Below, piece by piece: positions 1,907-55,786 of a DNA stretch of 64,000 nt. Position numbers and translations under genes: made by a program. The DNA lies in contig NW_005434659.1 in the NCBI RefSeq assembly GCF_000315625.1, positions 218,494 through 282,493 on the forward strand. Reading direction: 5' to 3'. Every line of letters starts with the position of its first letter. Within the stretch, counting starts at the first letter, position 1. Under the pieces are notes generated by a model. That model made no database searches and had not been told where the DNA came from. It saw nothing but the letters and a program-made list of their open reading frames with translations. The stretch is from Guillardia theta CCMP2712. Lineage: Eukaryota > Protista > Cryptophyta.

Positions 1907-4900
1907 CTGCAGGAGCAGGAGCAGGAGCAGGGGCAGGAGCAGGAGCAAGAGCAGCAGGGGCAGAGGGGATAGAGAATAGGCAAGACCTCTGTTGCTGTTC
2001 CATGCGCGTTATATTCAGGGGTGTCAAGAAACAAATCAGCGACTCTCTTTCCCTTGATTCTTTCTTGCTCCTGTAGAGGCGGAAGTGAGGTGAAAGGAGA
2101 GAGAAGGGAAAAGGCAGGAGAAGGAGAAGGGTACGGGAGGGGAGAGGGCAGGAGGAGGAGGAGGAGGAGGAGACTGGAAAGGAGAGGAGAAGAGAGGAGA
2201 GGGGAAGGGAGAGGAGGGAAAAGTCACCGAGAGCAGGTCGGTAAAGATCTTGACATTCGTTGAAGAAATTTTCTCAGCTCAAAGTGAACTTTGAAATTTC
2301 AAACTCACGAGGAAGTTTTTGAACTCCTTTGCAAAATTCTTGAGGTTCCGCTCAGCTGGCAGAGCCTCTGCGATGAACAAGATGAAAGTTGGTCAGAGCA
2401 GCGAAGGAGGAGGTCGAGGAGGAGGGAAGGAGGAGGTCGAGGAGGAGGTCGAGGAGGAGGAGGAGGAGGTCGAGGAGGAGGAGGAAAGTGAAATNNNNNN
2501 NNNNNNNNNNNNNNNNNNNNNNNNNNNNNNNNNNNNNNNNNNNNNNNNNNNNNNNNNNNNNNNNNNNNNNNNNNNNNNNNNNNNNNNNNNNNNNTGTCCA
2601 CTAGTTGATTACTCTGTTCCGATGTTGACGAGGTATTCAGGAGAGTGAGTTCAACGCCCTTAGCCAGAAGGATCAGCAAGACCGGAGAGAATTTTGGTCT
2701 CATACAAAGCTGGGATATATCGTCTGTACTACGAGCTTGCAAGGATCTATCAAAACAGATACACGTCTACGGCATTGCAACATCTTCGGATTGTTGTGAG
2801 CGATTACGACGCGATGTCCAACGACGACGCGATTGGAGAATGCGTGATCAGCATGAAGGAGACAGGCGGAATGATTGAGGTCCCGCTCGTCACAGGAAAG
2901 AAGCTCCTGACCGTGAAAGGCGAGCAGTCCAAGATCTCGGTCAAGATCGAGAAGAGAACATACCCGCCTGTGGCGGGCAAGGGCAGCAGGTTTGCATCCG
3001 GATGGCTGGTCACGATTGGAGGCATCAACGTCATTCCAAACGAGGACAGGGGGAGGGAGGAAGGGAAGGAGCTCACCAGTCATGACCTCCTCCTCGCTCG
3101 AGCCCTCTCCCTTGAATGCTGAGACAGGTAGCAGCTGCGATAGCTCGTTCAGTTCTGACGTGAGTTGGAAGCAGGTACCTGGAGGCGCTCGCTGTAGAAC
3201 TCGGCATGCTCCGGAGGGGCCTGCGTCGATCAGAGCGTGAGCAGGAGGTCGAGGAGGAGGTCGAGGAGGAGGTCGAGGAGGAGGAGGTCGGGGAGGAGGT
3301 CGAGGAGGAGATTAAGAAATTCAAGAAAGATGGTGGTGACAAGAGGAGAGGGAGGGGGGATGAAGAGACGAGAGAAGTTGGAGAAAGGCGCAGTCGTCCC
3401 TCCTATCAACCAAGAAACGGGGGGGGCAGGGGCAGGGGCAGGGGCAGGGGCAGGGGTAGAGGCAGAGGCGGGAAGAGCAGCGCTAGTCTCTATCTCACTT
3501 GTACTTTGTCGAGGATGTTGTAATGCATGTATGAAGCGCCAGAGGTACCTGCGTATCCCTGCAATAAAACCTGATGGACGAAAACTTCACAAACAGTAAA
3601 AGAAAAGCGAGAGACGAAGGAGAGCTGCAAACAGAAAGAGGGGGGAGAGAAAAGTGGTGGGGAATTGGAAGGAGAGAATTTAGAGGAGAGGAGAGGAGAG
3701 GAGAGGAGAGGAGAGGAGAGGAGAGGAGAGGAGAGGAGAGGAGAGGAGGGGAGAGGAGGGGAGAGGAGAGTTTGAGATTAGCAGGCAGCACGTTGAAGGA
3801 ACATCTTCACTCTCCTGGATGGGGCTCGGAGAGTAGGCAAAGATGGCAGTGCGAGCAGACGCCGTGTAGCCGTTCAAGTTCATCAGAATCTTCTCAGCTC
3901 GTCAGTCGCCGCTGGGACTTGTCAAACTCTCACGTGGACTCCCTGCTGGTTGATAGCCTGGGCCGCGTTGAAATCTGAGAGCTGAGAAGTGGGTGAAGTG
4001 AATTGCCTCAGCTGAGATTTTGAAAACGAAGGGGGAAGTTTGAAACTTGAGCCATTACCTGTTCAAGGGCGACGACTCGTTCGATGGATTCAGCTGTAAC
4101 TTTGTCAGTTGCTGCTGAGACAGAGGAGGGGGAGAGGAAAACGGAGGAGCAGGAGGGAGGAGGAGGGACAGAGGGAGAGGGAGAGGGAGAGTGTAGAGGG
4201 AGGGGGAGAGGGAAGGGGGGGGGGAGGGAGAAGGAGGGGAATAGGTAAAGGGAAAAGGAAAAAGGNNNNNNNNNNNNNNNNNNNNNNNNNNNNNNNNNNN
4301 NNNNNNNNNNNNNNNNNNNNNNNNNNNNNNNNNNNNNNNNNNNNNNNNNNNNNNNNNNNNNNNNNTTGAAAACGAAGGGGGAAGTTTGAAACTTGAGCCA
4401 TTACCTGTTCAAGGGCGACGACTCGTTCGATGGATTCAGCTGTAACTTTGTCAGTTGCTGCTGAGACAGAGGAGGGGGAGAGGAAAACGGAGGAGCAGGA
4501 GGAGGAGGAGGGACAGAGGGAGAGGGAGAGGGAGAGGGAGAGGGAGGGGGAGAGGGAGGGGGGGGGGGATGGCGATTGGAGAGGAAGTAGTGATGCAGCC
4601 GAGCTAGGTTGTAGATGGACGGCAGGTGGTTGGGTGCTCGTGCGATGGCCTGCAGCAGCGCTTCCTCTGCTTTCTTGTTCTCTCCAAGCTTCTGCAGCAG
4701 GCAGCCCAAGTTGCAGAGGATGGCAGCGTCCGTCGGTTTACGCTCCGTCACCCGCTGCACGATCCTCCTCACCTCGTCTTCGCTCGTCTTGCTCTGAGTG
4801 CAAGAGATGCAATACTCCAGCAGCGCCACTGGACTGTCAGGCTGCATGCTGATCGCTCGCTTGAACAGGGCCTGCGCCTCAAGGAAGAACAGCTCCTGCC

Positions 4901-6921
4901 ATGCCTCTCTCCTCCGGAAGGGCCGCAGGCGCTTCAGGCTCTGCCCGCATGTCTGTAGCAGGCGACCAAATTCGAGAAGGCTGGGGACATGCCGGGGCTC
5001 GACAGTCAAGAGGGTCTTGAGGTTCTTGAGGGACTCCAGCCTGTTGAGCTTTGAGAGGAGGAGCGAGAGCTGAAACCTGGCGGGGAGGAAGTTGGAGTCG
5101 ATCTCTCCATAGGGAGAGTCAGCAGGCGAGCAAAACAAGGTCAAGCATCTCACGAAGGGCGAGATGAAGATGTTTGCTCGCTAGTTCAGTCATGGCTGCT
5201 TGCNNNNNNNNNNNNNNNNNNNNNNNNNNNNNNNNNNNNNNNNNNNNNNNNNNNNNNNNNNNNNNNNNNNNNNNNNNNNNNNNNNNNNNNNNNNNNNNNN
5301 NNNNNNNNNNNNNNNNNNNNNNNNNNNNNNNNNNNNNNNNNNNNNNNNNNNNNNNNNNNNNNNNNNNNNNNNNNNNNNNNNNNNNNNNNNNNNNNNNNNN
5401 NNNNNNNNNNNNNNNNNNNNNNNNNNNNNNNNNNNNNNNNNNNNNNNNNNNNNNNNNNNNNNNNNNNNNNNNNNNNNNNNNNNNNNNNNNNNNNNNNNNN
5501 NNNNNNNNNNNNNNNNNNNNNNNNNNNNNNNNNNNNNNNNNNNNNNNNNNNNNNNNNNNNNNNNNNNNNNNNNNNNNNNNNNNNNNNNNNNNNNNNNNNN
5601 NNNNNNNNNNNNNNNNNNNNNNNNNNNNNNNNNNNNNNNNNNNNNNNNNNNNNNNNNNNNNNNNNNNNNNNNNNNNNNNNNNNNNNNNNNNNNNNNNNNN
5701 NNNNNNNNNNNNNNNNNNNNNNNNNNNNNNNNNNNNNNNNNNNNNNNNNNNNNNNNNNNNNNNNNNNNNNNNNNNNNNNNNNNNNNNNNNNNNNNNNNNN
5801 NNNNNNNNNNNNNNNNNNNNNNNNNNNNNNNNNNNNNNNNNNNNNNNNNNNNNNNNNNNNNNNNNNNNNNNNNNNNNNNNNNNNNNNNNNNNNNNNNNNN
5901 NNNNNNNNNNNNNNNNNNNNNNNNNNNNNNNNNNNNNNNNNNNNNNNNNNNNNNNNNNNNNNNNNNNNNNNNNNNNNNNNNNNNNNNNNNNNNNNNNNNN
6001 NNNNNNNNNNNNNNNNNNNNNNNNNNNNNNNNNNNNNNNNNNNNNNNNNNNNNNNNNNNNNNNNNNNNNNNNNNNNNNNNNNNNNNNNNNNNNNNNNNNN
6101 NNNNNNNNNNNNNNNNNNNNNNNNNNNNNNNNNNNNNNNNNNNNNNNNNNNNNNNNNNNNNNGAGGGAGGGAGGAGGAGAGAGGGAGGATAGAGGAGGAT
6201 TAGTTAGAAGGAGTTATCTCACCTGTGATGTTCGTCACTTCCAGGTAGCTTGAGAGCCTTCTCTATCCAGCTGATCGCACCCAGCATGTCCCCTTGCGCG
6301 TGCCTGCCATGCTCTCCCCATCAGCTCGTGGGTCCTAGTTGAGAGGACGCCTTCACTTCGCAAGTCCGACGTTGAAGTATGACCTCGGATCCTTCGCTGC
6401 AGTGCTAGCAAGTCTCATGAAGACCTCCTCAGCCTCCTTGTACTGACAGCAGAACATGTGTCAGCTGTCGCAGCAACCATGGTGCAGAGAATTTGGTCCA
6501 CCATGCCATGAACCCAGTATTCCTGCGCCTGAGCGTTCAATCTCGATATTTCGTCCACATTGTCCTGAGGAGTGCGATCAGCAGAAATGGCATCCAAGGA
6601 ATGTTCTACACATCAAACCCACTGAGTGCAAGGGATCAAGATACGAGTCAAGACGAGGGAGAAGCAGCAGTCAGCTATGAGAGTGGATGGCATGGGATGA
6701 GGCGAGTGAGGGGAGAGGAGAGGAGAGGAGAGGAGAGGAGAGGAGAGGAGAGGAGAGGAGAGGAGAGGAGAGGAGAGGAGAGGAGAGGAGGAGGGTTGCT
6801 TTGCGACGATGCAGAGAGGAGGGAAAGGAGCAGAGAGGCTGAGCAACCGATACCGACGCATCCACACAACATTGCTGCATCTCTCCACCTTCTCGCTCCC
6901 TCCTATCCCGATCGTCGCCAT
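749..6921 (-). CDS. TPR-containing GT41-family glycosyltransferase (O-GlcNAc transferase/SPINDLY-like); multi-exon, interrupted by gaps, start uncertain
   Basis: Spliced exons give TPRs (KEAEEVFMRL..PRSYFNVGLAKHAQGDMLGAISWIEKAL; ORF 4401-5153) and GT41 motifs: AAQAINQQGVHILMNLNGYTASARTAIFAYSPSPIQ, VLLQGYAGTSGASYMHYNILD, APPEHAEFYSERL, ADLFLDTPEYNAHGTATEVLSSGVPVLTLPG, SRVAASVVIAAGLPEIIARDLEDYEEIA, SSLFDR..WELFAQ. Stop at 749. Confidence 0.85.
2694..3048 (+). CDS. C2-domain coding fragment, antisense within the OGT-like locus (possible misassembly)
   Basis: LRIVVSDYDAMSNDDAIGECVISM is a typical Ca2+-binding C2 loop 3 motif. It is followed by WLVTIGGINVIPNED, resembling the start of a second C2, then runs into a purine tract with no GT donor. 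Confidence 0.55.
4020..4502. repeat. ~137-bp direct duplication (about 4020-4156 = 4366-4502) flanking a 100-N gap
   Basis: Identical sequence ttgaaaacgaagggggaag...ggaggagcagga occurs on both sides of the gap. Confidence 0.9.
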
Positions 6922-21675: not shown

Positions 21676-22825
21676 GACGACGAGACGCTGGCAGGAAGAG
21701 GAGGCGAGGGGGAGTTTCGATCTCTTTCACACACGTCCTGCGCAGGAACATTCAGCACGAGGGGGGAAACTGGATGACAAGACAAATCGATGGGAGCACA
21801 AGAGAACGGCGATCAGGAATCAGCGGCATCAGCACGATAGCATATACATTTCCAGGTGAGGATGATGTATCAGGGCACGGATCTAAATCACGAGTGACGG
21901 GTTCTCCTACCCTTCTTGTCTCCTCTCCCCTCGTCTCCTCCCTCCCTCCTTCCCTCCCTCCCTCCCTCCCTCCCTCCCTCCCTCCCTGAATCTGATCTGA
22001 AACTCTCTATCTCTGTCCCTCNNNNNNNNNNNNNNNNNNNNNNNNNNNNNNNNNNNNNNNNNNNNNNNNNNNNNNNNNNNNNNNNNNNNNNNNNNNNNNN
22101 NNNNNNNNNNNNNNNNNNNNNNNNNNNNNNNNNNNNNNNNNNNNNNNNNNNNNNNNNNNNNNNNNNNNNNNNNNNNNNNNNNNNNNNNNNNNNNNNNNNN
22201 NNNNNNNNNNNNNNNNNNNNNNNNNNNNNNNNNNNNNNNNNNNNNNNNNNNNNNNNNNNNNNNNNNNNNNNNNNNNNNNNNNNNNNNNNNNNNNNNNNNN
22301 NNNNNNNNNNNNNNNNNNNNNNNNNNNNNNNNNNNNNNNNNNNNNNNNNNNNNNNNNNNNNNNNNNNNNNNNNNNNNNNNNNNNNNNNNNNNNNNNNNNN
22401 NNNNNNNNNNNNNNNNNNNNNNNNNNNNNNNNNNNNNNNNNNNNNNNNNNNNNNNNNNNNNNNNNNNNNNNNNNNNNNNNNNNNNNNNNNNNNNNNNNNN
22501 NNNNNNNNNNNNNNNNNNNNNNNNNNNNNNNNNNNNNNNNNNNNNNNNNNNNNNNNNNNNNNNNNNNNNNNNNNNNNNNNNNNNNNNNNNNNNNNNNNNN
22601 NNNNNNNNNNNNNNNNNNNNNNNNNNNNNNNNNNNNNNNNNNNNNNNNNNNNNNNNNNNNNNNNNNNNNNNNNNNNNNNNNNNNNNNNNNNNNNNNNNNN
22701 NNNNNNNNNNNNNNNNNNNNNNNNNNNNNNNNNNNNNNNNNNNNNNNNNNNNNNNNNNNNNNNNNNNNNNNNNNNNNNNNNNNNNNNNNNNNNNNNNNNN
22801 NNNNNNNNNNNNNNNNNNNNNNNNN

Positions 22826-23445
22826 AGGGACCTACCAAAACTCTACAAGATATACCTGAGAGATGCAAGAGGGGTCGGAGGGGAGAAAGTAAGGGTGATC
22901 AAGTTCCCTGTTACAGACCAACCCCGCTTCGTCAGGCTTTGACCAACCCCCCCCCATCCCTCCAACAACCTCCCTCCCTCCCTCCCTCCCTCCCTGAATC
23001 TGATCTGAAACTCCTCCTATCCTCCTCGTCCCCTCCACCGTTCCCCATATCCGGGACCCCCCCCCCAATAACCCCCCCCCCCCTTCTCTCTTCCTCTCTC
23101 CCCTCCTCTTCCCGCGCCTTCGTACCTCTAATGGATCGCCATGCACGTGGAGCACGTGAAGCCGGAGTATCCGTATAAGTATCCGTAGGGTATCCGTAGG
23201 GTATCCGTAGGGTATCCTCTGGTGTATCCGTCAGTGATGCACGTGTAGATAGGCGGATCTGAAAATGGGGGGTGGGGGTACTTGTCGGTGGGGTCCAGCA
23301 AATGAGAACAGTTGCTAAAAGGGTAGTCTGAAGGAGATTTGCTGGTGAAAGTACCGGTGATGAAGTACCCCTACCCCATAGTTGTAGGAGGCATGTGGGG
23401 GGCCTGTACTTCTGATTCAACTCGCTGGGGTGGGTTTGTTGAAGG
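22826..23445. promoter_or_regulatory. GGGGTA/TACCCC-rich block with 11-bp GTATCCGTAGG repeats and three CACGTG boxes, in the divergent THADA / C1orf109-like spacer
   Basis: GTATCCGT-type units at 23167-23232; CACGTG at 23144, 23153 and 23240; agtacccctacccc and gggggtact words. Confidence 0.5.
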
Positions 23446-23458
23446 ACCGAGGAGCGGC

Positions 23459-24095
23459 ATGGCACGAGCAGCTTGGAGGGAAGCGGAGGAGGCGGCGATG
23501 GGATGGGAAGAGGCGGATGCTAGAGGCAGAGACATGCTGCTTGCCCTGTCCAACGCATCTTCTCGCATCAAGGACTTCGAGCAAGCAAGGGGCCGGCTCG
23601 GGGTTCTTTCCAACGTGAAAGGGGCGGAGGATAGGCTTCTGGTAATTCGTTCGCTGATTTGGCGAAGACAGCAAGGGCTAGAGGCTGAGTTGCTTGCCTC
23701 AGGTCATGCTGGGATCAAGCGTAGAACGGCTGATAGTAGCTCTGCGATCGATCGTCGTTTCTTTGAAGACAAGCTGCTCGAAGATGGAAAAAGCTGTGGA
23801 TGACGTCTTGACGGAGCTGGCGAATGCGCGAAACGAAGAGAACAAAAAGTTGTTGGCCTGGGAAGCAGATCGTGGACAACCGGTCTTAGCTGACATGGCG
23901 GAATGGCTCGAAGATGCATTGAACAACATGAAGAGAGAGAATGCTCTGCGTGAAATGCTTGTAGACGGCATCTCATACACTGAGAATGATGGGATCCGGA
24001 GGGCGATCGAATTGTGGAATACAGAAGTCTTCTTCCACCGAGACGAATTTCGTCAGCGAGCAGAAACCGTCAAGATTCATGCAGCAGCGGCATGA
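23459..24095 (+). CDS. C1orf109/AIRIM-like helical protein (2 exons; intron 23642-23703)
   Basis: MARAAWREAEEAAMGWEEADARGRDMLLALSNASSRI...LGVLSNVKGAEDRLL|VMLGSSVERLIVAL...PVLADMAEWLEDALNNMKRENALREMLVDGISY...IELW. The pattern recalls the C1orf109 family; assignment from memory. Confidence 0.5.
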
Positions 24096-35209: not shown

Positions 35210-38200
35210 CTACTGCTCGTCGGCGAACAAGCTGTTGGAGTTGAATTTGGCCGTGCTGTCTTGGATCATGTTCAGACGCAGCGAGTAGGCATCGATGTTG
35301 CCCTGGATCTGCTGTCCCTTCTTCATCTGTGGGGAAACCATGACGGTCCTCCTCGTCGGATCGATCTCCACCCGCACTCGGACAGACCTCCGATCGAACT
35401 CGGGCAGGCAGAAAGTCCTCCGGTACTCGGGCTCGGAGGGGAGGAAAACGGCGAAGCACACATCCTTTCCTGCTGGGATCCTCCAGATCGAGTTCACGTC
35501 CCCCGACGGGAAGCAGCCGTTGGGGGGGACTTCAGCTTTGATGATCGACTCTCCGCTCCTCTTGAACACTTCCACGTGCACTGGCTCGAACGCCATGTTG
35601 GTCACCTGCCACTCAAGTCAGATCCCCTCGCGGGGTCTTTGACTCCATCTCCTTTCACTTTCCCTCCTCTCCAGTCTCATCTCTCTCCTCTCCTCTCCTC
35701 CTTCCCCTCCCCTCCCTCTCCCTCTCGCACCACCTCCCTCCTCCGCCCTCACCTGAAGTCCCCGGGTGTCGGTGGTCTGTCCTAGAGGCGAGGGGGTCGC
35801 GAAGCTGGGTGTTCCCATGCTCTGCCTGCCACCAGCAGCCGCCTGTCCCACCGAAGGGGTCGCGACCCCCGTCCCATCGGCTTGTGCCGTGGGAGAGGAG
35901 GAGGAGGCAGACTTCTGCGGAGTCGTACGATCGTCCCTCGATCGGTCCGCACCAGCACCGGACCTCGAGGACATGCTGCTCCTGACACGGGAGTTGTCGA
36001 GCCCAGCTGGGATGGACTTGCGGGCGGGCGGGTCGTCCCTGGCGAAGCTGAAGTGACCCGAGGAGTGGCTGTCGTTCTTCCCGTCCTTCTTATCAATGTG
36101 ATGGCACTCGACCTCGAAGAACTCGCCCGTCAAGCTCGAGATCTTCTTCAGCCGGCTCGAGTAGACTCCAGCAAACAGTCTGCTCTCCGCCATGGTCGCT
36201 TGGTCCCTCAGCTCCTGCACCAGCTCCCGCGGTGTCTTTTCGTCCTCTCTGCCAGGCAGGATGGCGACAACCACGACGACGCTGCCGGAGGAGACGTTCT
36301 TGATGGAGACACGGTACTCGTCTACCCGCAGGCAACGCGACAGGTCTCTCTTGAGGCCGGTAGAGAACTTGTCCATGGCTGTGAGCACGAAGCCGAAGTC
36401 CATGTCGAGAACCATCTGAAGAATCTCCTCGTTGACTGCTGACTGATCGTTGAAGAAGTCCTGGTCTGCCTTGGACGTCTCTCCCTGGTACGAGTCGAAC
36501 ACCCTCGTGTCGTCGTCGTAGATCTCCCGGGTCGCGTCGTTGCCCTCCGGCATGATCGTGCTGACTCCTCCCCTCAGGTTCAGCGTCTGGTCTGCAGCCT
36601 TGGAGTCGCTCGTGTAGAGGCTCGCGATCGCCCGCTCAAAGCGCTTGCTTACAGCTTCTCGCACCGATGCGCTCACTGAGGACGGGCCGAGTTTGTGGTA
36701 GGACTCGGGCAGGAAGTCGGCGAGCAGGATGATGAACTTCCGTATGGAGAACCTGTGCGACTGGAGCTTCTTGTTCACCCTCGACATCGCGTCCACCAAG
36801 TAGTTCCTGAACTCCTTGTTGTCCTTGGCCTCTGAGACCGTCCTGGCTGCGCTGCAGAAGCCGTTGGCTGCCCTGATCGCGTCCTTGTGCAGCTCGTCGG
36901 TGCCGTCGGCGTTGGTCTTGAGGCTGATGAGGCAGGAGTAGAACGGCTTGTCCTCTCCGATGACGATGACGTTGGAGACGGCGCGGACGAGGTCGAGGAT
37001 GATGCTCTCTACCTCGGACTTGTCGTAGTCCACCTCCTCCGGCTCCTTGGCTTCCTCGCTGTAGAAGTTGGTGGGCAAGGGGAGCTCGACGCTAGCCTGC
37101 TCGTCTAGAGCATGCGTCACAATCTCGTCTTCCTCCTCCCTCACAGCTTCCGGAGGAGGGGCCTGAGCTTTCAGGAATGAACTCCTCTCTCTCTCCTCGA
37201 CCTTGGAGTTGCCAAGCTCCCCGTCCTCGGGAGCATCCTCCTCCTTCCTACTCAAGCTGGAAGCATTCATCTCCTCTGCTTGCACGACGCTCTCCCCTCC
37301 GTCCTTTTTCTCCTCCTCGACTCCGAAGGACTGGTGCACATCAGGGACGCTCGACGTCGCTCCCTCCTTCTCCTCCTTCGCCGCAGGAGGAGGAGGGACA
37401 GGAGCTGGATGCTCCGAGACCGCAACCGAACTCGCATTCTTCTCTCCTCTCACATCAAAAATCTGCGAAATGGACCCTGCTCGTGAGCTCACCCAGTCTT
37501 CCTTTCCCTCTCCAGCCGCAGCAGCTCCAACGTCTCCTGGCCCTCCCTTGGCATCGACCCACGAGTCGCGGTAGATCTCCCGGATGTTCTTGGCGTTCCT
37601 CGCGGCAATGAAGAGTCGTCGCAGCTAACAGCAGGAGTAAGCGCGAGCTCTCACGCCCCGGCGTGCGTCGTACCTCTTGCAGCGGCGTCAACTCCCCTCC
37701 TTCCACGGAGAACTGCCGACCAAGGATGGAGAATCTCTTGATGGCCGGGTAGCTGCGCAGGTACGTGAGGGAGAGAGGACAGAGTAGGGCAAGGGCAAAG
37801 GAGCAGCCGTGACTTACAAGGGGGGGAGAGACTGGTTGACCCGTTGGACTCCCTGGATCAGAAGGGACGTGAACGAGTCGCTCTTGCGAGCATCTTGGAT
37901 GGTGTGGATACGAATATTCTTGTGCTGAAGGAACTTGATAAACTCGTCGTCCAGGTAGACCTCCTGCTTCGTCGTGCTCGGCTGCTTGGCTTTGAGAGGG
38001 AGCGTGATCAGGCAAGACACGAACGGCATGCCGTTCCCTATCATGACGACCCCACTGACGAAGGGGAGGAACTGCTTCAGGTACGCCTCGTAGAAGCAAG
38101 CCGACACTTGCTTTCCGGTTGAGAGAGTGATGATCTCAGTGTCCCTGCATTCGATCTTGATCAGCATCGAGTCCGAATCGATCTTGCCGATGTCGTGGGT

Positions 38201-40330
38201 CCGGAAGACACCATCATCGTCGAACACTTGCAAGCATCTTTTCGCCTGTTTGTAGTACCCCAGCATCACGTTCCTCCCTGCGACCTCGAGCTCATGTAAC
38301 TCGCACTCCGGCGAGACCTCCCCGGCCTGCTTCCGGAACAAGATCTTCGTTCCTGGCAGAGCTCTGCCAGAGTATCCGTGCCGGAACTTGGGCGAGCTGC
38401 TGTGAGTCTTGGTCAGTATCGTGAGTCCCTGGACTCCACTCGTCTCAGTCGCTCCGTACATGCACAGGACGGGCCTTCCTATACTCGCAAGCAGGTCTAG
38501 TGTGTCGCTGTCCACGCATGGCCCGAAGCATGCAGCGTACCTGCACTCGTCGAGCCCGACCGTCTCCCACATCTTTGAGAACACCAGCCTCTTCGCCAGC
38601 CCCCATGACGCCCCCTTGGACGAGTTCGGCTGCCCGCTCGCCAGCCCGATCCCCTGCTGCTTTTCTGCCACGGACTTGCCTCGCTCGAGGGCCCAGGAGA
38701 AGGTCTTGGCCTTGGTGCCGTGCGCTTCTGTGATCTGAGACTTGACGATGCCGGCGACCTGCTGCCAGAAGGGAGCACGTGCGATGACGTGGGTAGGCTT
38801 GATGGCCCTGAGGGCCGTGAGCATGTCCGAGAACTGCACGTCGTTGCGGATCGGGAAGGAGACAGAGCAGCCGGAGACCAGGGCCAAGTGAAGGCAGAAG
38901 ATCTGGGAGGTCGCACACGCCATGGGCAGGCAGGAAACGATCGAGTCCTTAACAGTCAGGTTCAGGTTGGCCTGGAGGGCTGATGCTGTCCAGGTAACAT
39001 TGTCGTGAGTCAGCATGACGGGCTTCTGAGAGCCCGTCGTTCCCTGAGTGGTCAAGATGCAGCAGCACCGGCCGGGCCGAAGATTCTTCTTCCTGTTGTC
39101 CAACTCCGCCGTGTGTTCTGCATCCTTGGAAACATCGAGGAACGAAGTCCATGTGTACACCCCGTACCAGTTGTTTCTTCGATCCCCAGTCCGCTTCTCT
39201 TCCAAGTCAAGGATCTGCTGAATCTGTGAAGGAGGTTTTTGGTTGTCGTTCCAGTACACGATATTCCTGAGGAACGGAAGCTCGTCCTTGACGTGGTAGA
39301 ACGAGCGGACGACGGTCTGGCTGGACGCTATGATGACCGAGGGCTCCAGATGCTTCACGTTTGCCAAGTGCGTCTCGAACGCGTCTTCTTCGAAGAGGCA
39401 GCAGGGGATACACCCTGCGCAGATCGACCCGAGGTAGGAAATCACCCATGTACAAGACCCATGACCGATCAGGCAGATCCTATCGTCCGCCTTGAACCCA
39501 CGTTTCACAAAGGCGTACGCGCTGGCATTGGTTTTCTCTGCAAGAGAGTCATAGGTCAGCTCTGTCCTCCTCTTCCCGTCTGCAGTGACGTCGGAGTAAG
39601 CCACATTGACTTCGAACTTCTTCGAGGCTTGGCGCAACACTTGCAGCACGGTAGTTGGAGTGGAACTGTATGCTTGATCAAAACATCGCCGAACGAGCTC
39701 GCGATCTAAGACTGAAGACCAGTTCTCCGCAAACTGAGGAGTCGAGTCTGTTCCCTGAGCAATGCCGCCACTCTCCATGGTCTCTTTCCTGCTGGAAGGC
39801 TGCACGGACACCTTCTTGGTTTGTTCTTGTTTCTCGACGTTCGGATGCCCCTGATTCTCCTCCTCGACAATCTCGCAGACGGCTTCTCTTGCTGCCTGCG
39901 ACTTTACACCCGATCCTGCAATTCCTTCTCGAGCTTTAATCGTGGAGCCTTGCTCCTCCGCCTGTGGAACAGACCCTACTGGCAAGGGCTGCCTTACAGC
40001 ATCAGCACGAGCAAGCAGCCTGGTAGCAGAGACTCACTTGCTCAGCCGATGGACTAGATAGATCCTTGTACTTGACATGCTTGTGCTGGAACAAACCATC
40101 TTAGTCGGATGCTAGCTTGAGACAGAACAAGTTGTACTGACCTCAGCGTTCGCTGGAAGGGAGTGCAACGCGTTGAAACACTGGGAGGAAAAGTAAAACT
40201 TGAGCAGCAGCGGTGAATATCTTCGTCAGAGTCAAATACTCACTTCAGTACAGAGATCTTGATAACAGTCTAGACAGAAATAAACTGAACCAGGAACATC
40301 ACACAGGGCACAGTTCGGTCGCTCAGTCAT
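35210..40330 (-). CDS. Fusion protein: B-box zinc finger + bubblegum-type long-chain acyl-CoA synthetase-like domain + duplicated ACS C-terminal subdomain + SEA-like domain + unknown C-terminal domain
   Basis: Exons 40330-40244, 40180-40142, 40085-40038, 39961-37818, 37752-37674, 37624-35753 and 35605-35210 all join in frame at GT-AG sites. AMP-binding family motifs include TTQGTTGSQKPVMLTHDNVTW, YGATETSG, GRNVMLGYYK and FSVEGGELTP. Confidence 0.85.
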
Positions 40331-48636: not shown

Positions 48637-51600
48637 ATGGAACATGAAGCGAACAATCAGCCCGGGAGCTCGATCAGAGTGAGAGGAGGAGGAGGAGGAG
48701 GGGGAGAGAAGAGCATGCAACATCAGGAGGAGGAGGAGAGAGGGAGGGGAGAGAAGAGCATGCAACATCAGGAGGAGGAGGAGAGAGGGAGGAGAGAGAG
48801 AAGAGCATGCAACATCAGGAGGGAGAGAGAGAGGGAGGGGAGAGAAAGAAGAGCATGCAACATCAGGAGGGAGAGAGAGAGGGAGGGGAGAGAGAGAAGA
48901 GCATGCAACATCAGGAGGGGGAGAGAGAGAGAGAGGGAGGGGAGAGAAAGAAGAGCATGCAACATCAGGAGGGGAGAGAGAGAGGGAGGGGAGAGAAAGA
49001 AGAGCATGCAACATCAGGAGGGGAGAGAATGGTGAGCAAGATATTGTTCTGAAGCACGGCCGCAGGAAATCATCGAAACACGCGTGGAGCATGTGTTAGA
49101 GATCGTAATCCCACAGCTCGAGATCAACGTTGACTTTGTGAGCTAATCAAAATGTTGGGAGGCGCTTATCCTGATGAGAGGCTGCCAGCAAAAGCTGAGG
49201 GAGAGGTTCCGCAAGAACACGAAGATGGAAGGTCAAGTGCGATCCATCTTCGACGACCTGATGACTGCGGTGAGCTTCAGACATGAAGAACAATCAGCGA
49301 CCTGACGGCTCAACCGCAAGATCAACACATGGCACGTGAAGGACAGCATCTTCAAGCACGCGACTGCGATATCGGAGGACCTGCCTCGTGACATCGAAGA
49401 CATCGGGAGGACAGCTCAGCGCCATGGGTAAGAGTTTCCTGCCCCCATCCTTTCAGCGCCTGACCGGGAAGCTCACAGGTATTTTAGTCGCTTCCAGACG
49501 GAAGAAGCCGAAAAGATTCGCATCCTTCAAGCTACTGTGAGCTGACCGCCCTTGTTTCCTCCCTTCTCAGTCTGCCCTCCCAGGTTGAGGATCTTGAAGG
49601 AGACCTGTAGCTCGTCTGCCCTCCCCGCCGCGCGTGACTGCTGGGTGCTGCAGGCAACGGCTGCGGGGATTGTACAAGGAAGACATGGAGCGAATGAGCG
49701 AGGAGCTCGCAAGCTTGAGGTGAGCTGGGGCAGCGCCGTTGCGATGGGAACCGACGAGTTGCAGGCTGGAGCTGGTGGACTCGGGCAAGCAACGGCTGGA
49801 GCTCCAGCAGCAGATTATTGTGCAGGTCGTTGCGCCTGCTGCCTGCTGAGGGCGTCTGAAGGAGGAGGATCGGGGTGTGCAGGAGCAGAGGACCAGTGAG
49901 GAGATAAATAGGCTGCAGCAGATTGTGGACAACGACACCATCGTGGTCACGTCATTGTCAAACGTAAGTGCGCCCGCTGCTTCCTCCTCCTCCTCCTCCT
50001 CTTCCTCCTCCTCCTCCTCCTCCTCCTCCTCTTTCTCCTCTCCTCCACCAACTCCTCCTGCTGTTCATTGCTTCCGGCTGGCAGGACCTGGAAATTATTA
50101 AGCTGGAGAAGGAGAAGCTTAGAATGGAAGTGAAGGACCTGGAGGTGAGGAAAGGCCGGAGATGGCGATAAGCAAGGAAGGGTCAGGAGGGAGGAGAAGA
50201 GAAAAAAAGGAACAGGGAAGCAAAGCAAGAGTCGAGGAGACGAACAGAGGGAGGAGAGGAAAGAAAAGTACAAGAGAAGGGAAAGAGGAGGAGGAGGAGG
50301 AGGAGGAGGAGATGAATGAGATGAACGCAGGCGCGTCTGGACAGCTGTGAGCTGACTATCACGAAGAAGGAAGCGAACATCAAGTGATTCATCTGCCCTC
50401 CCTGTTCCTCCTCCTACCCTCCTCCTGCCATCTTTCTTTCTTTATCCTTCCCCCCCTACAACGCCCTTCCTGCCTTCATTTCTTCATCCTTCCCCCTCCT
50501 CCTACCCTCCTCCTGCCTGACACTCCTTGAGGTCGTTGGAGTCCTACGTCGAGCGGGTCTGCTGCGAGGGGCGCGTGATGGAGGGCTAAGAGGATACTGG
50601 GCAGTTGACGAGTGACAAGGGAGGGATCAAGCAGGCGATGGTGGAGGCGGAGGGGAAGCTGAAGTCGAGCGAGAGGGTAAGAGGGATGTTGGAAAGTGCG
50701 AGGAAGATAGAGTTGGGTGCAGGCACAGGAGCAGCTCATGGAGCTCAACGAGAAGATCGCAGCGAAAGGTAGCACGTCATGGCATGCAGACATTTCCATC
50801 CCTTCCTTCTCTATCCTCTCCTCTCCTCTCCTCTCCTCTCCTCTCCTCTCCTCTCCTCTCCTCTCCTCTCCTCTCCTCTCCTCTCCTCTCCTCTCCTCTC
50901 CTCTCCNNNNNNNNNNNNNNNNNNNNNNNNNNNNNNNNNNNNNNNNNNNNNNNNNNNNNNNNNNNNNNNNNNNNNNNNNNNNNNNNNNNNNNNNNNNNNN
51001 NNNNNNNNNNNNNNNNNNNNNNNNNNNNNNNNNNNNNNNNNNNNNNNNNNNNNNNNNNNNNNNNNNNNNNNNNNNNNNNNNNNNNNNNNNNNNNNNNNNN
51101 NNNNNNNNNNNNNNNNNNNNNNNNNNNNNNNNNNNNNNNNNNNNNNNNNNNNNNNNNNNNNNNNNNNNNNNNNNNNNNNNNNNNNNNNNNNNNNNNNNNN
51201 NNNNNNNNNNNNNNNNNNNNNNNNNNNNNNNNNNNNNNNNNNNNNNNNNNNNNNNNNNNNNNNNNNNNNNNNNNNNNNNNNNNNNNNNNNNNNNNNNNNN
51301 NNNNNNNNNNNNNNNNNNNNNNNNNNNNNNNNNNNNNNNNNNNNNNNNNNNNNNNNNNNNNNNNNNNNNNNNNNNNNNNNNNNNNNNNNNNNNNNNNNNN
51401 NNNNNNNNNNNNNNNNNNNNNNNNNNNNNNNNNNNNNNNNNNNNNNNNNNNNNNNNNNNNNNNNNNNNNNNNNNNNNNNNNNNNNNNNNNNNNNNNNNNN
51501 NNNNNNNNNNNNNNNNNNNNNNNNNNNNNNNNNNNNNNNNNNNNNNNNNNNNNNNNNNNNNNNNNNNNNNNNNNNNNNNNNNNNNNNNNNNNNNNNNNNN

Positions 51601-51975
51601 NNNNNNNNNNNNNNNNNNNNNNNNNNNNNNNNNNNNNNNNNNNNNNNNNNNNNNNNNNNNNNNNNNNNNNNNNNNNNNNNNNNNNNNNNNNNNNNNNNNN
51701 NNNNNNNNNNNNNNNNNNNNNNNNNNNNNNNNNNNNNNNNNNNNNNNNNNNNNNNNNNNNNNNNNNNNNNNNNNNNCTCCTCTCCTCTCCTCTCCTCTCC
51801 TCTCATGCATGTTGGTCAGCAAAGAGGATCAACGCTTTGATGAAGACTCACCTGGAGCAGAAGGAGGTGATGAAATGCGATCTACCATCACCACCACCAC
51901 CACCTCCTCCTCCTCCTCCCTCCTCCTCCTTCTTAACGTCAGTTTCTTCTGCCGCCTCCTCTCCAGGTAAGGTGA
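48637..51975 (+). CDS. Coiled-coil hypothetical protein; many exons, spans an N gap
   Basis: In-frame splicing: MEHEANNQPGSSIR|EIIETRVEHVLEI|QKLRERFRKNTKMEGQVRSIFDDLMTA|INTWHVKDS...|EQRTSEEINRLQQIVD..|DLEIIKLEKEKLRMEVKDLE. Confidence 0.65.
48700..49030. repeat. Minisatellite: 7 copies of AAGAGCATGCAACATCAGGAGG with variable GA-rich spacers, in intron 1
   Basis: The core recurs every ~45-55 bp (near 48709, 48754, 48801, 48849, 48897, 48951, 49000). Confidence 0.9.
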
Positions 51976-52079
51976 TGCTTCCAGGCTGTTCGTCTTTCTG
52001 GGACTTTCCCGCTCCTCCTCCTCCTCCTTCTTGCTGCTTGCCGCCATAAGAGGATTCCACTGAGATATCTCACGAGCCT

Positions 52080-55786
<3,707 letters not shown>

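What the first reader, a model, noticed from the sequence alone, without database searches (positions are those of the whole stretch)
40038..40330. Hidden B-box zinc finger on three micro-exons, fused to an acyl-CoA synthetase-like protein
Seen: exons of 87, 39 and 48 nt, absent from the ORF track, splice in phase 0 to MTERPNCALCDVPGSVYFCLDCYQDLCTECFNALHSLPANAEHKHV (C-x2-C-x8-C-x2-C-x4-C-x2-C-x4-H-x7-H) and then in frame into the ACS ORF. Established: this spacing is B-box-like, and B-boxes are interaction modules of TRIM and CONSTANS/BBX proteins. Inference: I know of no B-box + ANL/bubblegum-type ACS architecture, so this may be a regulatory or scaffold protein that senses fatty acid or acyl-CoA.
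Basis: partly seen in the sequence, partly recalled or inferred. Interest (0 to 1): 0.75.

Follow-up and report, generated by a model that had tools for sequence, protein, structure and literature searches.

The report
B-box finger heading an ACS-like gene
In the alga Guillardia theta, three tiny unannotated exons encode a B-box zinc finger that most likely forms the start of a long acyl-CoA-synthetase-like protein with worn catalytic motifs; this domain combination was found in none of the relatives checked, and its function is untested.

Summary
On the minus strand of this Guillardia theta window, exons of 87, 39 and 48 nt (40330-40244, 40180-40142, 40085-40038) have consensus GT..AG borders and are all in phase 0. 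Read in order, they give the eight zinc ligands of a type-1 B-box with exact spacing, then run in frame into the acyl-CoA synthetase (ACS) ORF.

- **Transcript support:** the exon 3 to ACS junction appears in a transcript-derived protein of the sister alga Hanusia phi. The exon 1-2 and 2-3 junctions are inferred.
- **Paralogue support:** another G. theta B-box gene has an intron at the same codon.
- **Gene length:** the gene is far longer than the annotated 581-aa partial model, about 1,467 aa. It also holds a second ACS C-terminal-like domain and a conserved unnamed domain.
- **Relatives:** seven metagenomic family members and the 150 nearest cluster representatives have no B-box. Full-length family members end in a PDZ domain instead.
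- **Catalytic motifs:** the core ACS motifs are drifted across the clade.

Exon 1 alone scores 13.6 bits against Pfam zf-B_box, below the cut-off.

Another first-stage note (s1-445715, unchecked) reports a B-box/PDZ/orphan ACS C-domain gene elsewhere in this genome.

Verdict: a real, new domain architecture of moderate interest. The proposed lipid-sensing role is speculation.

The parts
40244..40330 (-). Exon 1 (87 nt, 29 aa): start codon and the first five Cys ligands of the B-box
   Evidence: Translation. An in-frame TGA lies at 40336-40334. Pfam zf-B_box scores 13.6 bits, E 0.077, profile positions 3-28 of 42. The half-motif is unique in the window.
40181..40243 (-). Intron 1 (63 nt), gtgagt...cccag
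   Evidence: G. theta paralogue L001 has an intron at the same codon.
40142..40180 (-). Exon 2 (39 nt, 13 aa): sixth Cys and first His ligand (starts CFNALH)
   Evidence: Translation. Exon 2 of paralogue L001 starts CFEALH.
40086..40141 (-). Intron 2 (56 nt), gtcagt...ttccag
   Evidence: It holds an in-frame TAA five codons before exon 3, so exon 3 cannot be reached by read-through.
40038..40085 (-). Exon 3 (48 nt, 16 aa): last His ligand (HKH) and the start of the linker
   Evidence: Translation. It matches 11 of 16 residues of Hanusia phi P0001 positions 24-39, including HKHVKYKD, which is followed there directly by the exon 4 equivalent.
39962..40037 (-). Intron 3 (76 nt), gtgagt...ccacag
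   Evidence: In P0001 the residue after ...AEQ is P, not the V that a retained GT would encode, and the linker length matches. The intron is therefore spliced out, or absent, in Hanusia.
37818..39961 (-). Exon 4: acidic linker of about 100 aa, then the AMP-binding (ANL) domain and the start of AMP-binding_C_3
   Evidence: Pfam PF00501 at 2.3e-40 and PF23562 at 24.2 bits. It is 100% identical to GUITHDRAFT_61132 (P0002).
37753..37817 (-). Intron 4 (65 nt), gtaagt...gcgcag
   Evidence: Spliced in the NCBI model P0002 (...SLPPF|YPAIKRF).
37674..37752 (-). Exon 5 (79 nt): end of the ACS C-terminal subdomain up to ...GELTPLQE
37625..37673 (-). Intron 5 (49 nt), gtacga...tgttag. Proposed here; the NCBI model reads through it and stops as partial.
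   Evidence: It restores the usual ...LRR...IYxD ending seen in relatives and the frame of the downstream ORF.
35618..37624 (-). Exon 6 (668 codons plus stop): linker, a second AMP-binding_C_3-like domain (about 36542-37018), a conserved unnamed domain (36131-36448), and a Ser/Gly/Arg-rich tail
   Evidence: PF23562 hit at profile positions 17-122 of 124. It is colinear with P0017 residues 958-1289, at 36% identity and E 7e-51.

Best explanation
This is one long nuclear gene of Guillardia theta on the minus strand, spanning 40330 to 35618 in six exons and encoding about 1,467 aa.

Architecture:
- The first three micro-exons encode a single N-terminal type-1 B-box, a cross-brace finger expected to bind two zinc ions.
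- An acidic linker of about 100 residues follows.
- Next comes a bubblegum-type long-chain acyl-CoA-synthetase-like (ANL) domain.
- Then come a second copy of the ACS C-terminal subdomain, a conserved unnamed domain, and a low-complexity tail.

Origin: the B-box is an addition of the Guillardia/Hanusia lineage to an older family whose other members lack it. The full-length members of that family end in a PDZ domain instead.

Function (inferred, not shown): the B-box serves as a protein-protein interaction or self-association module. It would tether or cluster an ACS-like body whose adenylation motifs are worn, so that body probably binds an acyl or nucleotide ligand rather than turning it over. 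With no signal peptide ahead of the finger, the protein would be cytosolic or nuclear.
For: Shown:
- Exon coordinates, phase 0 and consensus GT..AG borders, with an in-frame stop just before the ATG.
- Ligand spacing C-x2-C-x8-C-x2-C-x4-C-x2-C-x4-H-x7-H fits the B1 consensus of PMC5533445.
- The spacing equals that of unsplit G. theta B-boxes L007 (28.7 bits) and L010 (23.9 bits alone, 24.2 with its neighbours in frame).
- Exon 1 alone gives Pfam zf-B_box 13.6 bits over profile positions 3-28.
- Paralogue L001 is split at the same codon (...CVE|CFEALH...).
- Hanusia phi P0001 carries exon 3 fused to the ACS part.
- In G. theta a TAA five codons upstream of exon 3, with no ATG between, forces an upstream coding exon.
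- The ACS ORF and the downstream ORF are colinear with single ORFs of relatives (P0017, 1481 aa).
- Relatives carry AMP-binding, AMP-binding_C_3 and PDZ but no B-box.
- Motif drift across the clade: TSGTTGxPKG becomes TTQGTTGSQKP, SGD becomes THD, GGEN becomes TGKQ, and the A10 Lys becomes Glu.
Against: - No G. theta transcript or transcript-derived protein spanning exons 1-3 was found.
- The only Hanusia protein starts inside what reads as retained intron 2, so junctions 1-2 and 2-3 are unobserved.
- The joined finger was not scanned or folded. Exon 1 alone is below Pfam's cut-off and scores equally for zf-UBP. Against solved structures it weakly resembles PHD and HIT fingers.
- With a home-made B-box profile, exons 2 and 3 alone score about 0 bits.
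- GC3 of exons 1-3 is 0.45 against 0.74 for the body, although it rises gradually through the exon 4 linker.
- The function is wholly inferred.
Confidence: 0.7

Rival explanations
1. The B-box exons are real, but the fusion is a minor or alternative product. The main products would be a short B-box-only peptide (intron 3 retained, stop after 11 more codons) and/or an ACS-like protein that starts at the first in-frame ATG of exon 4, about 70 codons in.
For: - Retained intron 3 runs into a TGA after 11 codons.
- Exon 4 has an internal in-frame Met.
- The Hanusia transcript is itself incompletely spliced at introns 2 and 4.
- Exons 1-3 have lower GC3 than the body.
Against: - The Hanusia protein shows exon 3 joined to the ACS part.
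- Coding conservation extends upstream of the internal Met (VKSQ, CEIVEE, HKHVKYKD).
- Splice sites are strong consensus.
Confidence: 0.12
2. The finger is not a B-box but another cross-brace or treble-clef zinc finger, such as HIT, MYND, PHD or UBP-like, with a different partner type.
For: - Exon 1 alone scores 14.1 bits for zf-UBP against 13.6 for zf-B_box.
- The best weak matches among solved structures are the MLL3 and KAP-1 PHD fingers and the ZNHIT1 HIT finger, at E 0.5 to 5.6.
Against: - The zf-UBP match covers only profile positions 1-22 of 63.
- From my own knowledge of those families, HIT and MYND have three residues between ligands 5 and 6 and end in Cys. Here the gap is two residues and the last pair is His/His, as in type-1 B-boxes.
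- Same-spaced G. theta paralogues reach the B-box cut-off on their own or with neighbouring matches in the same frame.
Confidence: 0.08
3. Exons 1 and 2 are untranslated or decaying relics, or a chance pattern, and the true 5' coding exon that feeds exon 3 lies elsewhere.
For: - No transcript evidence exists for exons 1 and 2.
- Exon 1 has GC3 of 0.31.
Against: - All eight ligands are intact, with three in-phase consensus splice pairs.
- Shuffles give 0.01 half-motifs per window.
- A paralogue has the same intron position.
- No other long ORF or B-box half-motif lies in the 2 kb upstream.
Confidence: 0.05

Closest known systems
Type-1 B-box of animal TRIM/RBCC proteins (for example the B1 boxes described with TRIM21 in PMC5533445)
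   Same: The ligand pattern and spacing are identical: C-x2-C-x7-12-C-x2-C-x4-C-x2-[CH]-x3-4-H-x4-9-H. An interaction and oligomerisation role is presumed.
   Different: There is no RING before it and no coiled coil after it. It is a single B1 box, whereas single boxes in TRIMs are usually B2. It heads an enzyme-like protein rather than an E3 ligase.
Plant BBX/CONSTANS B-box1
   Same: It is an N-terminal B-box with C-x2-C-x8-C spacing and a tail resembling H...HKR/HV.
   Different: The fourth ligand is Cys rather than the plant Asp. No CCT domain or VP motif is present (no Pfam hit in exons 4 and 6).
Bubblegum-type long-chain acyl-CoA synthetases (ACSBG; Pfam AMP-binding + AMP-binding_C_3)
   Same: The domain order and fold-level homology match. 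Relatives are named ACSBG by their sources.
   Different: Identity to ordinary members is only 25-30%. The P-loop, A7 and A8 motifs are drifted and the A10 Lys is replaced. The protein adds an N-terminal B-box and about 670 extra C-terminal residues.
Unnamed marine-metagenome clade P0017/P0182/P0185 (ACS-like, second C-domain, unnamed domain, PDZ)
   Same: These are the closest relatives, at 36-38% identity and colinear over the ACS part, the second C-like domain and the unnamed domain. They share the same motif drift.
   Different: They have no B-box, and full-length members end in a PDZ. No PDZ was found at the G. theta locus.
G. theta paralogue on contig C26 (L001/L014): B-box + PDZ protein
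   Same: Its N-terminal B1-type B-box is split by an intron at the same codon, and its exon 2 starts CFEALH.
   Different: It is followed by at least three PDZ domains, two of them Pfam hits and the third read by eye from an upstream small exon. No ANL domain or ACS-C similarity was found. Similarity at DNA level is low, so it is not a recent copy.

Membership tests
B-box zinc finger (Pfam PF00643), type 1 | Eight zinc ligands spaced C-x2-C-x7-12-C-x2-C-x4-C-x2-[CH]-x3-4-H-x4-9-H | tested here: met
   Read across exons 1-3 in order. The consensus is taken from PMC5533445. The columns match G. theta B-boxes in alignment A1.
B-box zinc finger (Pfam PF00643), type 1 | Score at or above Pfam's gathering threshold (24.1 bits) | tested here: inconclusive
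Only exon 1 is long enough to scan alone: 13.6 bits, profile positions 3-28 of 42. Exons 2 and 3 alone score about 0 bits with a home-made profile.
B-box zinc finger (Pfam PF00643), type 1 | Cross-brace fold binding two zinc ions | not testable with these tools
   This needs the joined sequence for a fold prediction, or a metal-binding experiment.
B-box zinc finger (Pfam PF00643), type 1 | The three exons are joined in mature mRNA | tested here: inconclusive
   The exon 3 to exon 4 join is seen in Hanusia phi P0001. Junctions 1-2 and 2-3 are unobserved, and no G. theta transcript product was found.
TRIM / RBCC proteins | RING finger N-terminal to the B-box and a coiled coil after it | tested here: not met
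   The ATG of exon 1 follows an in-frame stop. No Cys-rich ORF lies upstream. The B-box is followed by an acidic linker and an ANL domain.
Plant BBX / CONSTANS-like | B-box with Asp as fourth ligand, often with a CCT domain | tested here: not met
   The fourth ligand is Cys. No CCT hit appears in exons 4 or 6.
ANL superfamily, long-chain acyl-CoA synthetase (ACSBG-like) | AMP-binding and AMP-binding_C_3 domains above Pfam cut-offs | tested here: met
   PF00501 scores 139 bits against a cut-off of 29.9; PF23562 scores 24.2 against 20.8.
ANL superfamily, long-chain acyl-CoA synthetase (ACSBG-like) | Intact adenylation motifs: P-loop T[SG]GTTGxPKG, A7 [ST]GD, A8 GRxK...GGEN, A10 Lys | tested here: not met
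   Alignment A2 with nine relatives plus the exon 5 and 6 reading give TTQGTTGSQKP, THD, CRDTE...TGKQ and ...TPLQELRR (Lys to Glu). The same drift appears in Hanusia and P0017. Activity itself was not assayed.

The most novel reading that the evidence does not exclude
A cryptophyte lineage added a TRIM/BBX-type B-box to a catalytically dead bubblegum-type acyl-CoA synthetase; no PDZ, which ends its full-length relatives, was found at the G. theta locus. This would create a new kind of acyl- or nucleotide-ligand-binding scaffold whose assembly or partner choice is set by the zinc finger. In effect it would be a lipid-state sensor built from an enzyme fossil and an interaction module.
Probability: 0.15. 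Interest if true: 0.6.

Novelty: new variant of a known kind. Interest (0 to 1): 0.4.

Why it matters
- **Annotation:** the finding corrects a reference gene model. GUITHDRAFT_61132 is annotated as a 581-aa partial protein, and the gene is about 1,467 aa.
- **Gene finding:** it shows that whole domains can hide on micro-exons that ORF-based views miss in this genome.
- **Family:** it defines a small, undescribed family of ACS-like proteins with worn catalytic motifs that always carry an interaction module. That module is a PDZ in the metagenomic relatives and a B-box in Guillardia/Hanusia.
- **If the B-box is translated as modelled:** this family offers a tractable case of an enzyme fold recruited to a scaffold or sensing role, and of domain gain through intron-flanked exons.
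- **Limits:** both domains are well known, such accretions are common in protists, and no function has been shown.

Tried and rejected
- Only per-exon references were used.
- **Per-exon profile scoring:** I built a B-box HMM from seven unsplit G. theta B-boxes. Exon 1 ranks 4th of 4,829 scored of the 6,691 AG..GT micro-exon candidates in the window. Exons 2 and 3 score about 0 bits, being too short, so this test is uninformative.
- **Search for transcript-derived G. theta or Hanusia proteins covering the 5' end:** the 715-aa query found only P0001 and P0002. The 200-aa linker query found nothing. A search through P0017 residues 940-1300, aimed at long proteins, found only metagenomic relatives.
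- **B-box upstream of relative P0017 on contig L013:** none in the 600 nt upstream or anywhere in the 24-kb locus.
- **PDZ at the G. theta locus:** none.
- **Recent duplication from paralogue L001:** rejected, because DNA similarity is low.
- **Locating the gene of note s1-445715 (B-box + six PDZ + orphan ACS C-domain):** the C26 gene has a B-box and PDZs but no detectable ACS-C similarity. The C100 orphan ACS-C-like ORF has no B-box within 10 kb upstream. A genome scan with PF23562 returned only the present locus. This is unresolved.
- **Literature:** no paper mentions this gene or a B-box/ACS combination.

Full report
**Source and setting**

The window is Guillardia theta CCMP2712 nuclear DNA. 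The ACS ORF is 100% identical to GUITHDRAFT_61132, a 581-aa model annotated as partial at both ends (P0002). The window corresponds to G000:C15:218494-282493. Nothing here is human, viral or toxin-related.

**Observation**

On the minus strand an ATG at 40330 follows an in-frame TGA two codons upstream.
- Exon 1 (40330-40244) translates to 29 residues.
- Exon 2 (40180-40142) translates to 13 residues.
- Exon 3 (40085-40038) translates to 16 residues.
- Every border is a strong GT..AG consensus with a pyrimidine tract, introns are 63, 56 and 76 nt, and all exons are phase 0.
- Exon 4 starts at 39961 and carries the frame into the AMP-binding ORF (Pfam PF00501 2.3e-40, PF23562 24.2 bits).

Read exon by exon in order, the Cys/His ligands fall as C-x2-C-x8-C-x2-C-x4-C | C-x4-H | H. 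That gives C-x2-C between exons 1 and 2, and H-x7-H between exons 2 and 3.

The five-ligand half-motif is the only one in six frames of the window apart from a poly-Cys simple repeat. Shuffles give 0.01 per window.

**Is it a B-box?**

The spacing meets every term of the published type-1 consensus C-X2-C-X7-12-C-X2-C-X4-C-X2-[CH]-X3-4-H-X4-9-H (PMC5533445).

G. theta has at least 15 six-frame B-box candidates. Unsplit ones that reach Pfam's cut-off on their own or with neighbouring matches in the same frame (L007 at 28.7 bits; L010 at 23.9 bits alone, 24.2 with its neighbours) have exactly the same spacing.

Exon 1 alone gives zf-B_box 13.6 bits (E 0.077) over profile positions 3-28 of 42. That is the part it should cover, but it is below the 24.1-bit cut-off and level with a partial zf-UBP match. 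Against solved structures it only weakly resembles PHD and HIT fingers.

A home-made profile could not score the 13- and 16-residue exons on their own.

**Are the exons used, and joined to the ACS?**

Four lines of evidence bear on this.

1. Hanusia phi, the sister alga, has a transcriptome-derived protein (P0001, EukProt, 80% identical).
   - Its residues 24-39 match exon 3 at 11 of 16 positions, including HKHVKYKD. They are followed at once by the exon 4 equivalent, with a linker of matching length.
   - The residue after ...AEQ is Pro, not the Val that a retained GT would encode, so that junction is spliced or intron-free.
   - The 23 residues before it end in ...FQ, which is what an unspliced ...ttccag acceptor would encode. 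The protein also ends ...PPL, exactly where the G. theta frame runs into the TAA within the gtaagt donor of intron 4. The contig therefore comes from partly spliced RNA and says nothing about exons 1 and 2.
2. In G. theta a TAA sits five codons upstream of exon 3 with no ATG between, so a conserved, coding exon 3 needs an upstream coding exon.
3. Paralogue L001 on contig C26 has a B-box cut by an intron at the same codon (...CVE | CFEALH..., against ...CTE | CFNALH... here). It then continues into PDZ domains. Two further paralogues (L002, L003) are split one codon earlier.
4. The motif is completed only by this particular splice path.

Against: no G. theta transcript product was found. GC3 of exons 1-3 is 0.45 against 0.74 in the body, but it climbs gradually (0.54, 0.56, 0.66...) through the exon 4 linker, so this is a gradient rather than a break.

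**The whole gene**

- Intron 4 (37817-37753) is the one used in the NCBI model (...SLPPF|YPAIKRF).
- After exon 5 (...GELTPLQE, ending at 37674) I propose a 49-nt intron (gtacga...tgttag). It restores the usual LRR...IYRD ending and opens into the 668-codon frame that ends at 35618.
- That downstream ORF is colinear with the single 1481-aa ORF of the nearest distant relative: P0017 residues 958-1289, 36% identity, E 7e-51.
- It holds a second AMP-binding_C_3-like domain and a conserved unnamed domain.
- The predicted product is about 1,467 aa.

**Relatives and architecture**

The every-protein search gave 13,646 hits, but only a handful are close: P0017 (37%; 49 near-identical copies in ENA metagenome assemblies, the contig read being from a Tara Oceans sample, in an intron-poor eukaryote), P0018 and P0026. 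A search through P0017 added P0182-P0185.

The relatives long enough to show it carry AMP-binding, AMP-binding_C_3 and PDZ. None has a B-box-like motif, and there is none upstream of P0017 on its contig.

None of eight N-terminally extended ordinary ACS relatives has a B-box by Pfam.

No PDZ was found at the G. theta locus. On present evidence the B-box is therefore a Guillardia/Hanusia addition. Uniqueness beyond these samples is untested.

**Catalytic state**

Alignment with canonical long-chain ACSs shows these changes in G. theta:

| Motif | Canonical | G. theta |
|---|---|---|
| P-loop | TSGTTGxPKG | TTQGTTGSQKP |
| (unnamed) | LPLSH | LPMAC |
| A7 | SGD | THD |
| A8 | GRxKE...GGEN | CRDTE...TGKQ |
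| A10 | PTMK | PLQE |

Comparable changes occur in Hanusia, P0017 and P0018. It points to lost or altered adenylation, but no assay exists.

**Mechanism, with status**

- Shown: the exon anatomy, the B1-type ligand pattern, the exon 3-4 join in the sister species, the long colinear gene, the lack of a B-box in relatives, and the motif drift.
- Inferred: exons 1-3 are joined in G. theta; the finger binds two zinc ions; it mediates partner binding or self-association of an ACS-like, probably non-catalytic, ligand-binding body; the protein is cytosolic or nuclear because no leader precedes the finger.

**Verdict**

It is a new combination of two well-known domains on a little-known pseudo-enzyme-like family. 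Interest is moderate.

A first-stage note on another piece of this genome (s1-445715) reports a B-box/PDZ/orphan ACS C-domain gene. I could not locate or confirm it.

Noticed in passing
window 35618-39961 (-): The reference model GUITHDRAFT_61132 (581 aa, partial) covers only the middle of a gene of about 1,467 aa. It reads through the intron 5 donor, and it misses exons 1-3, the first 163 codons of exon 4, and all of exon 6.
   Followed up: yes
window 36542-37018 (-): This is a second, duplicated ACS C-terminal subdomain (PF23562 profile positions 17-122), placed about 200 residues after the first. It is conserved in P0017. An orphan paralogue of this domain lies on contig C100 (L015:6027-6770, E 2e-07).
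   Followed up: partly
window 36131-36448 (-): This conserved domain has no Pfam hit (…LDMD…SGSVVV…). It is shared with P0017 residues 1184-1289 and recurs in other G. theta ORFs: once on C9 and three tandem copies on C77.
   Followed up: partly
L013:10001-14446 and P0182-P0185: This is an undescribed marine-metagenome clade of ACS-like proteins ending in a PDZ domain, encoded as single intron-free ORFs in a gene-dense eukaryote of about 54% GC. The organism was not identified.
   Followed up: partly
L001 / L014 (G000:C26:698700-709600, minus): This G. theta gene has an N-terminal B1-type B-box, split at the same codon as here, followed by at least three PDZ domains and a 970-aa exon.
   Followed up: partly
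L002 (C11) and L003 (C119): This pair of paralogous B-box genes has a first exon ending ...KIC(Q/V) and a second exon starting ECDEVIHLIPEKTVHQR. The intron lies one codon earlier than in the present gene.
   Followed up: no
P0001 (Hanusia phi EukProt): The transcript-derived protein appears to come from partly spliced RNA. Its first 23 residues read like a retained intron 2, and it stops at the equivalent of the G. theta in-frame TAA within the intron 4 donor.
   Followed up: partly
window ~52860-52905 (-); also L016 ~6690-6790: A trinucleotide repeat reads as poly-Cys in one frame. A similar repeat lies on contig C100.
   Followed up: no
window 4001-6000, 22001-24000, 50001-52000: Three AT-rich islands (GC 0.31-0.33) stand out in a window that otherwise runs 0.47-0.65 GC.
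   Followed up: no
window 40330-37818 (-): GC3 rises steadily from 5' to 3' along the gene: 0.31 in exon 1, about 0.55 in the linker, and 0.74-0.88 in the enzyme body.
   Followed up: partly
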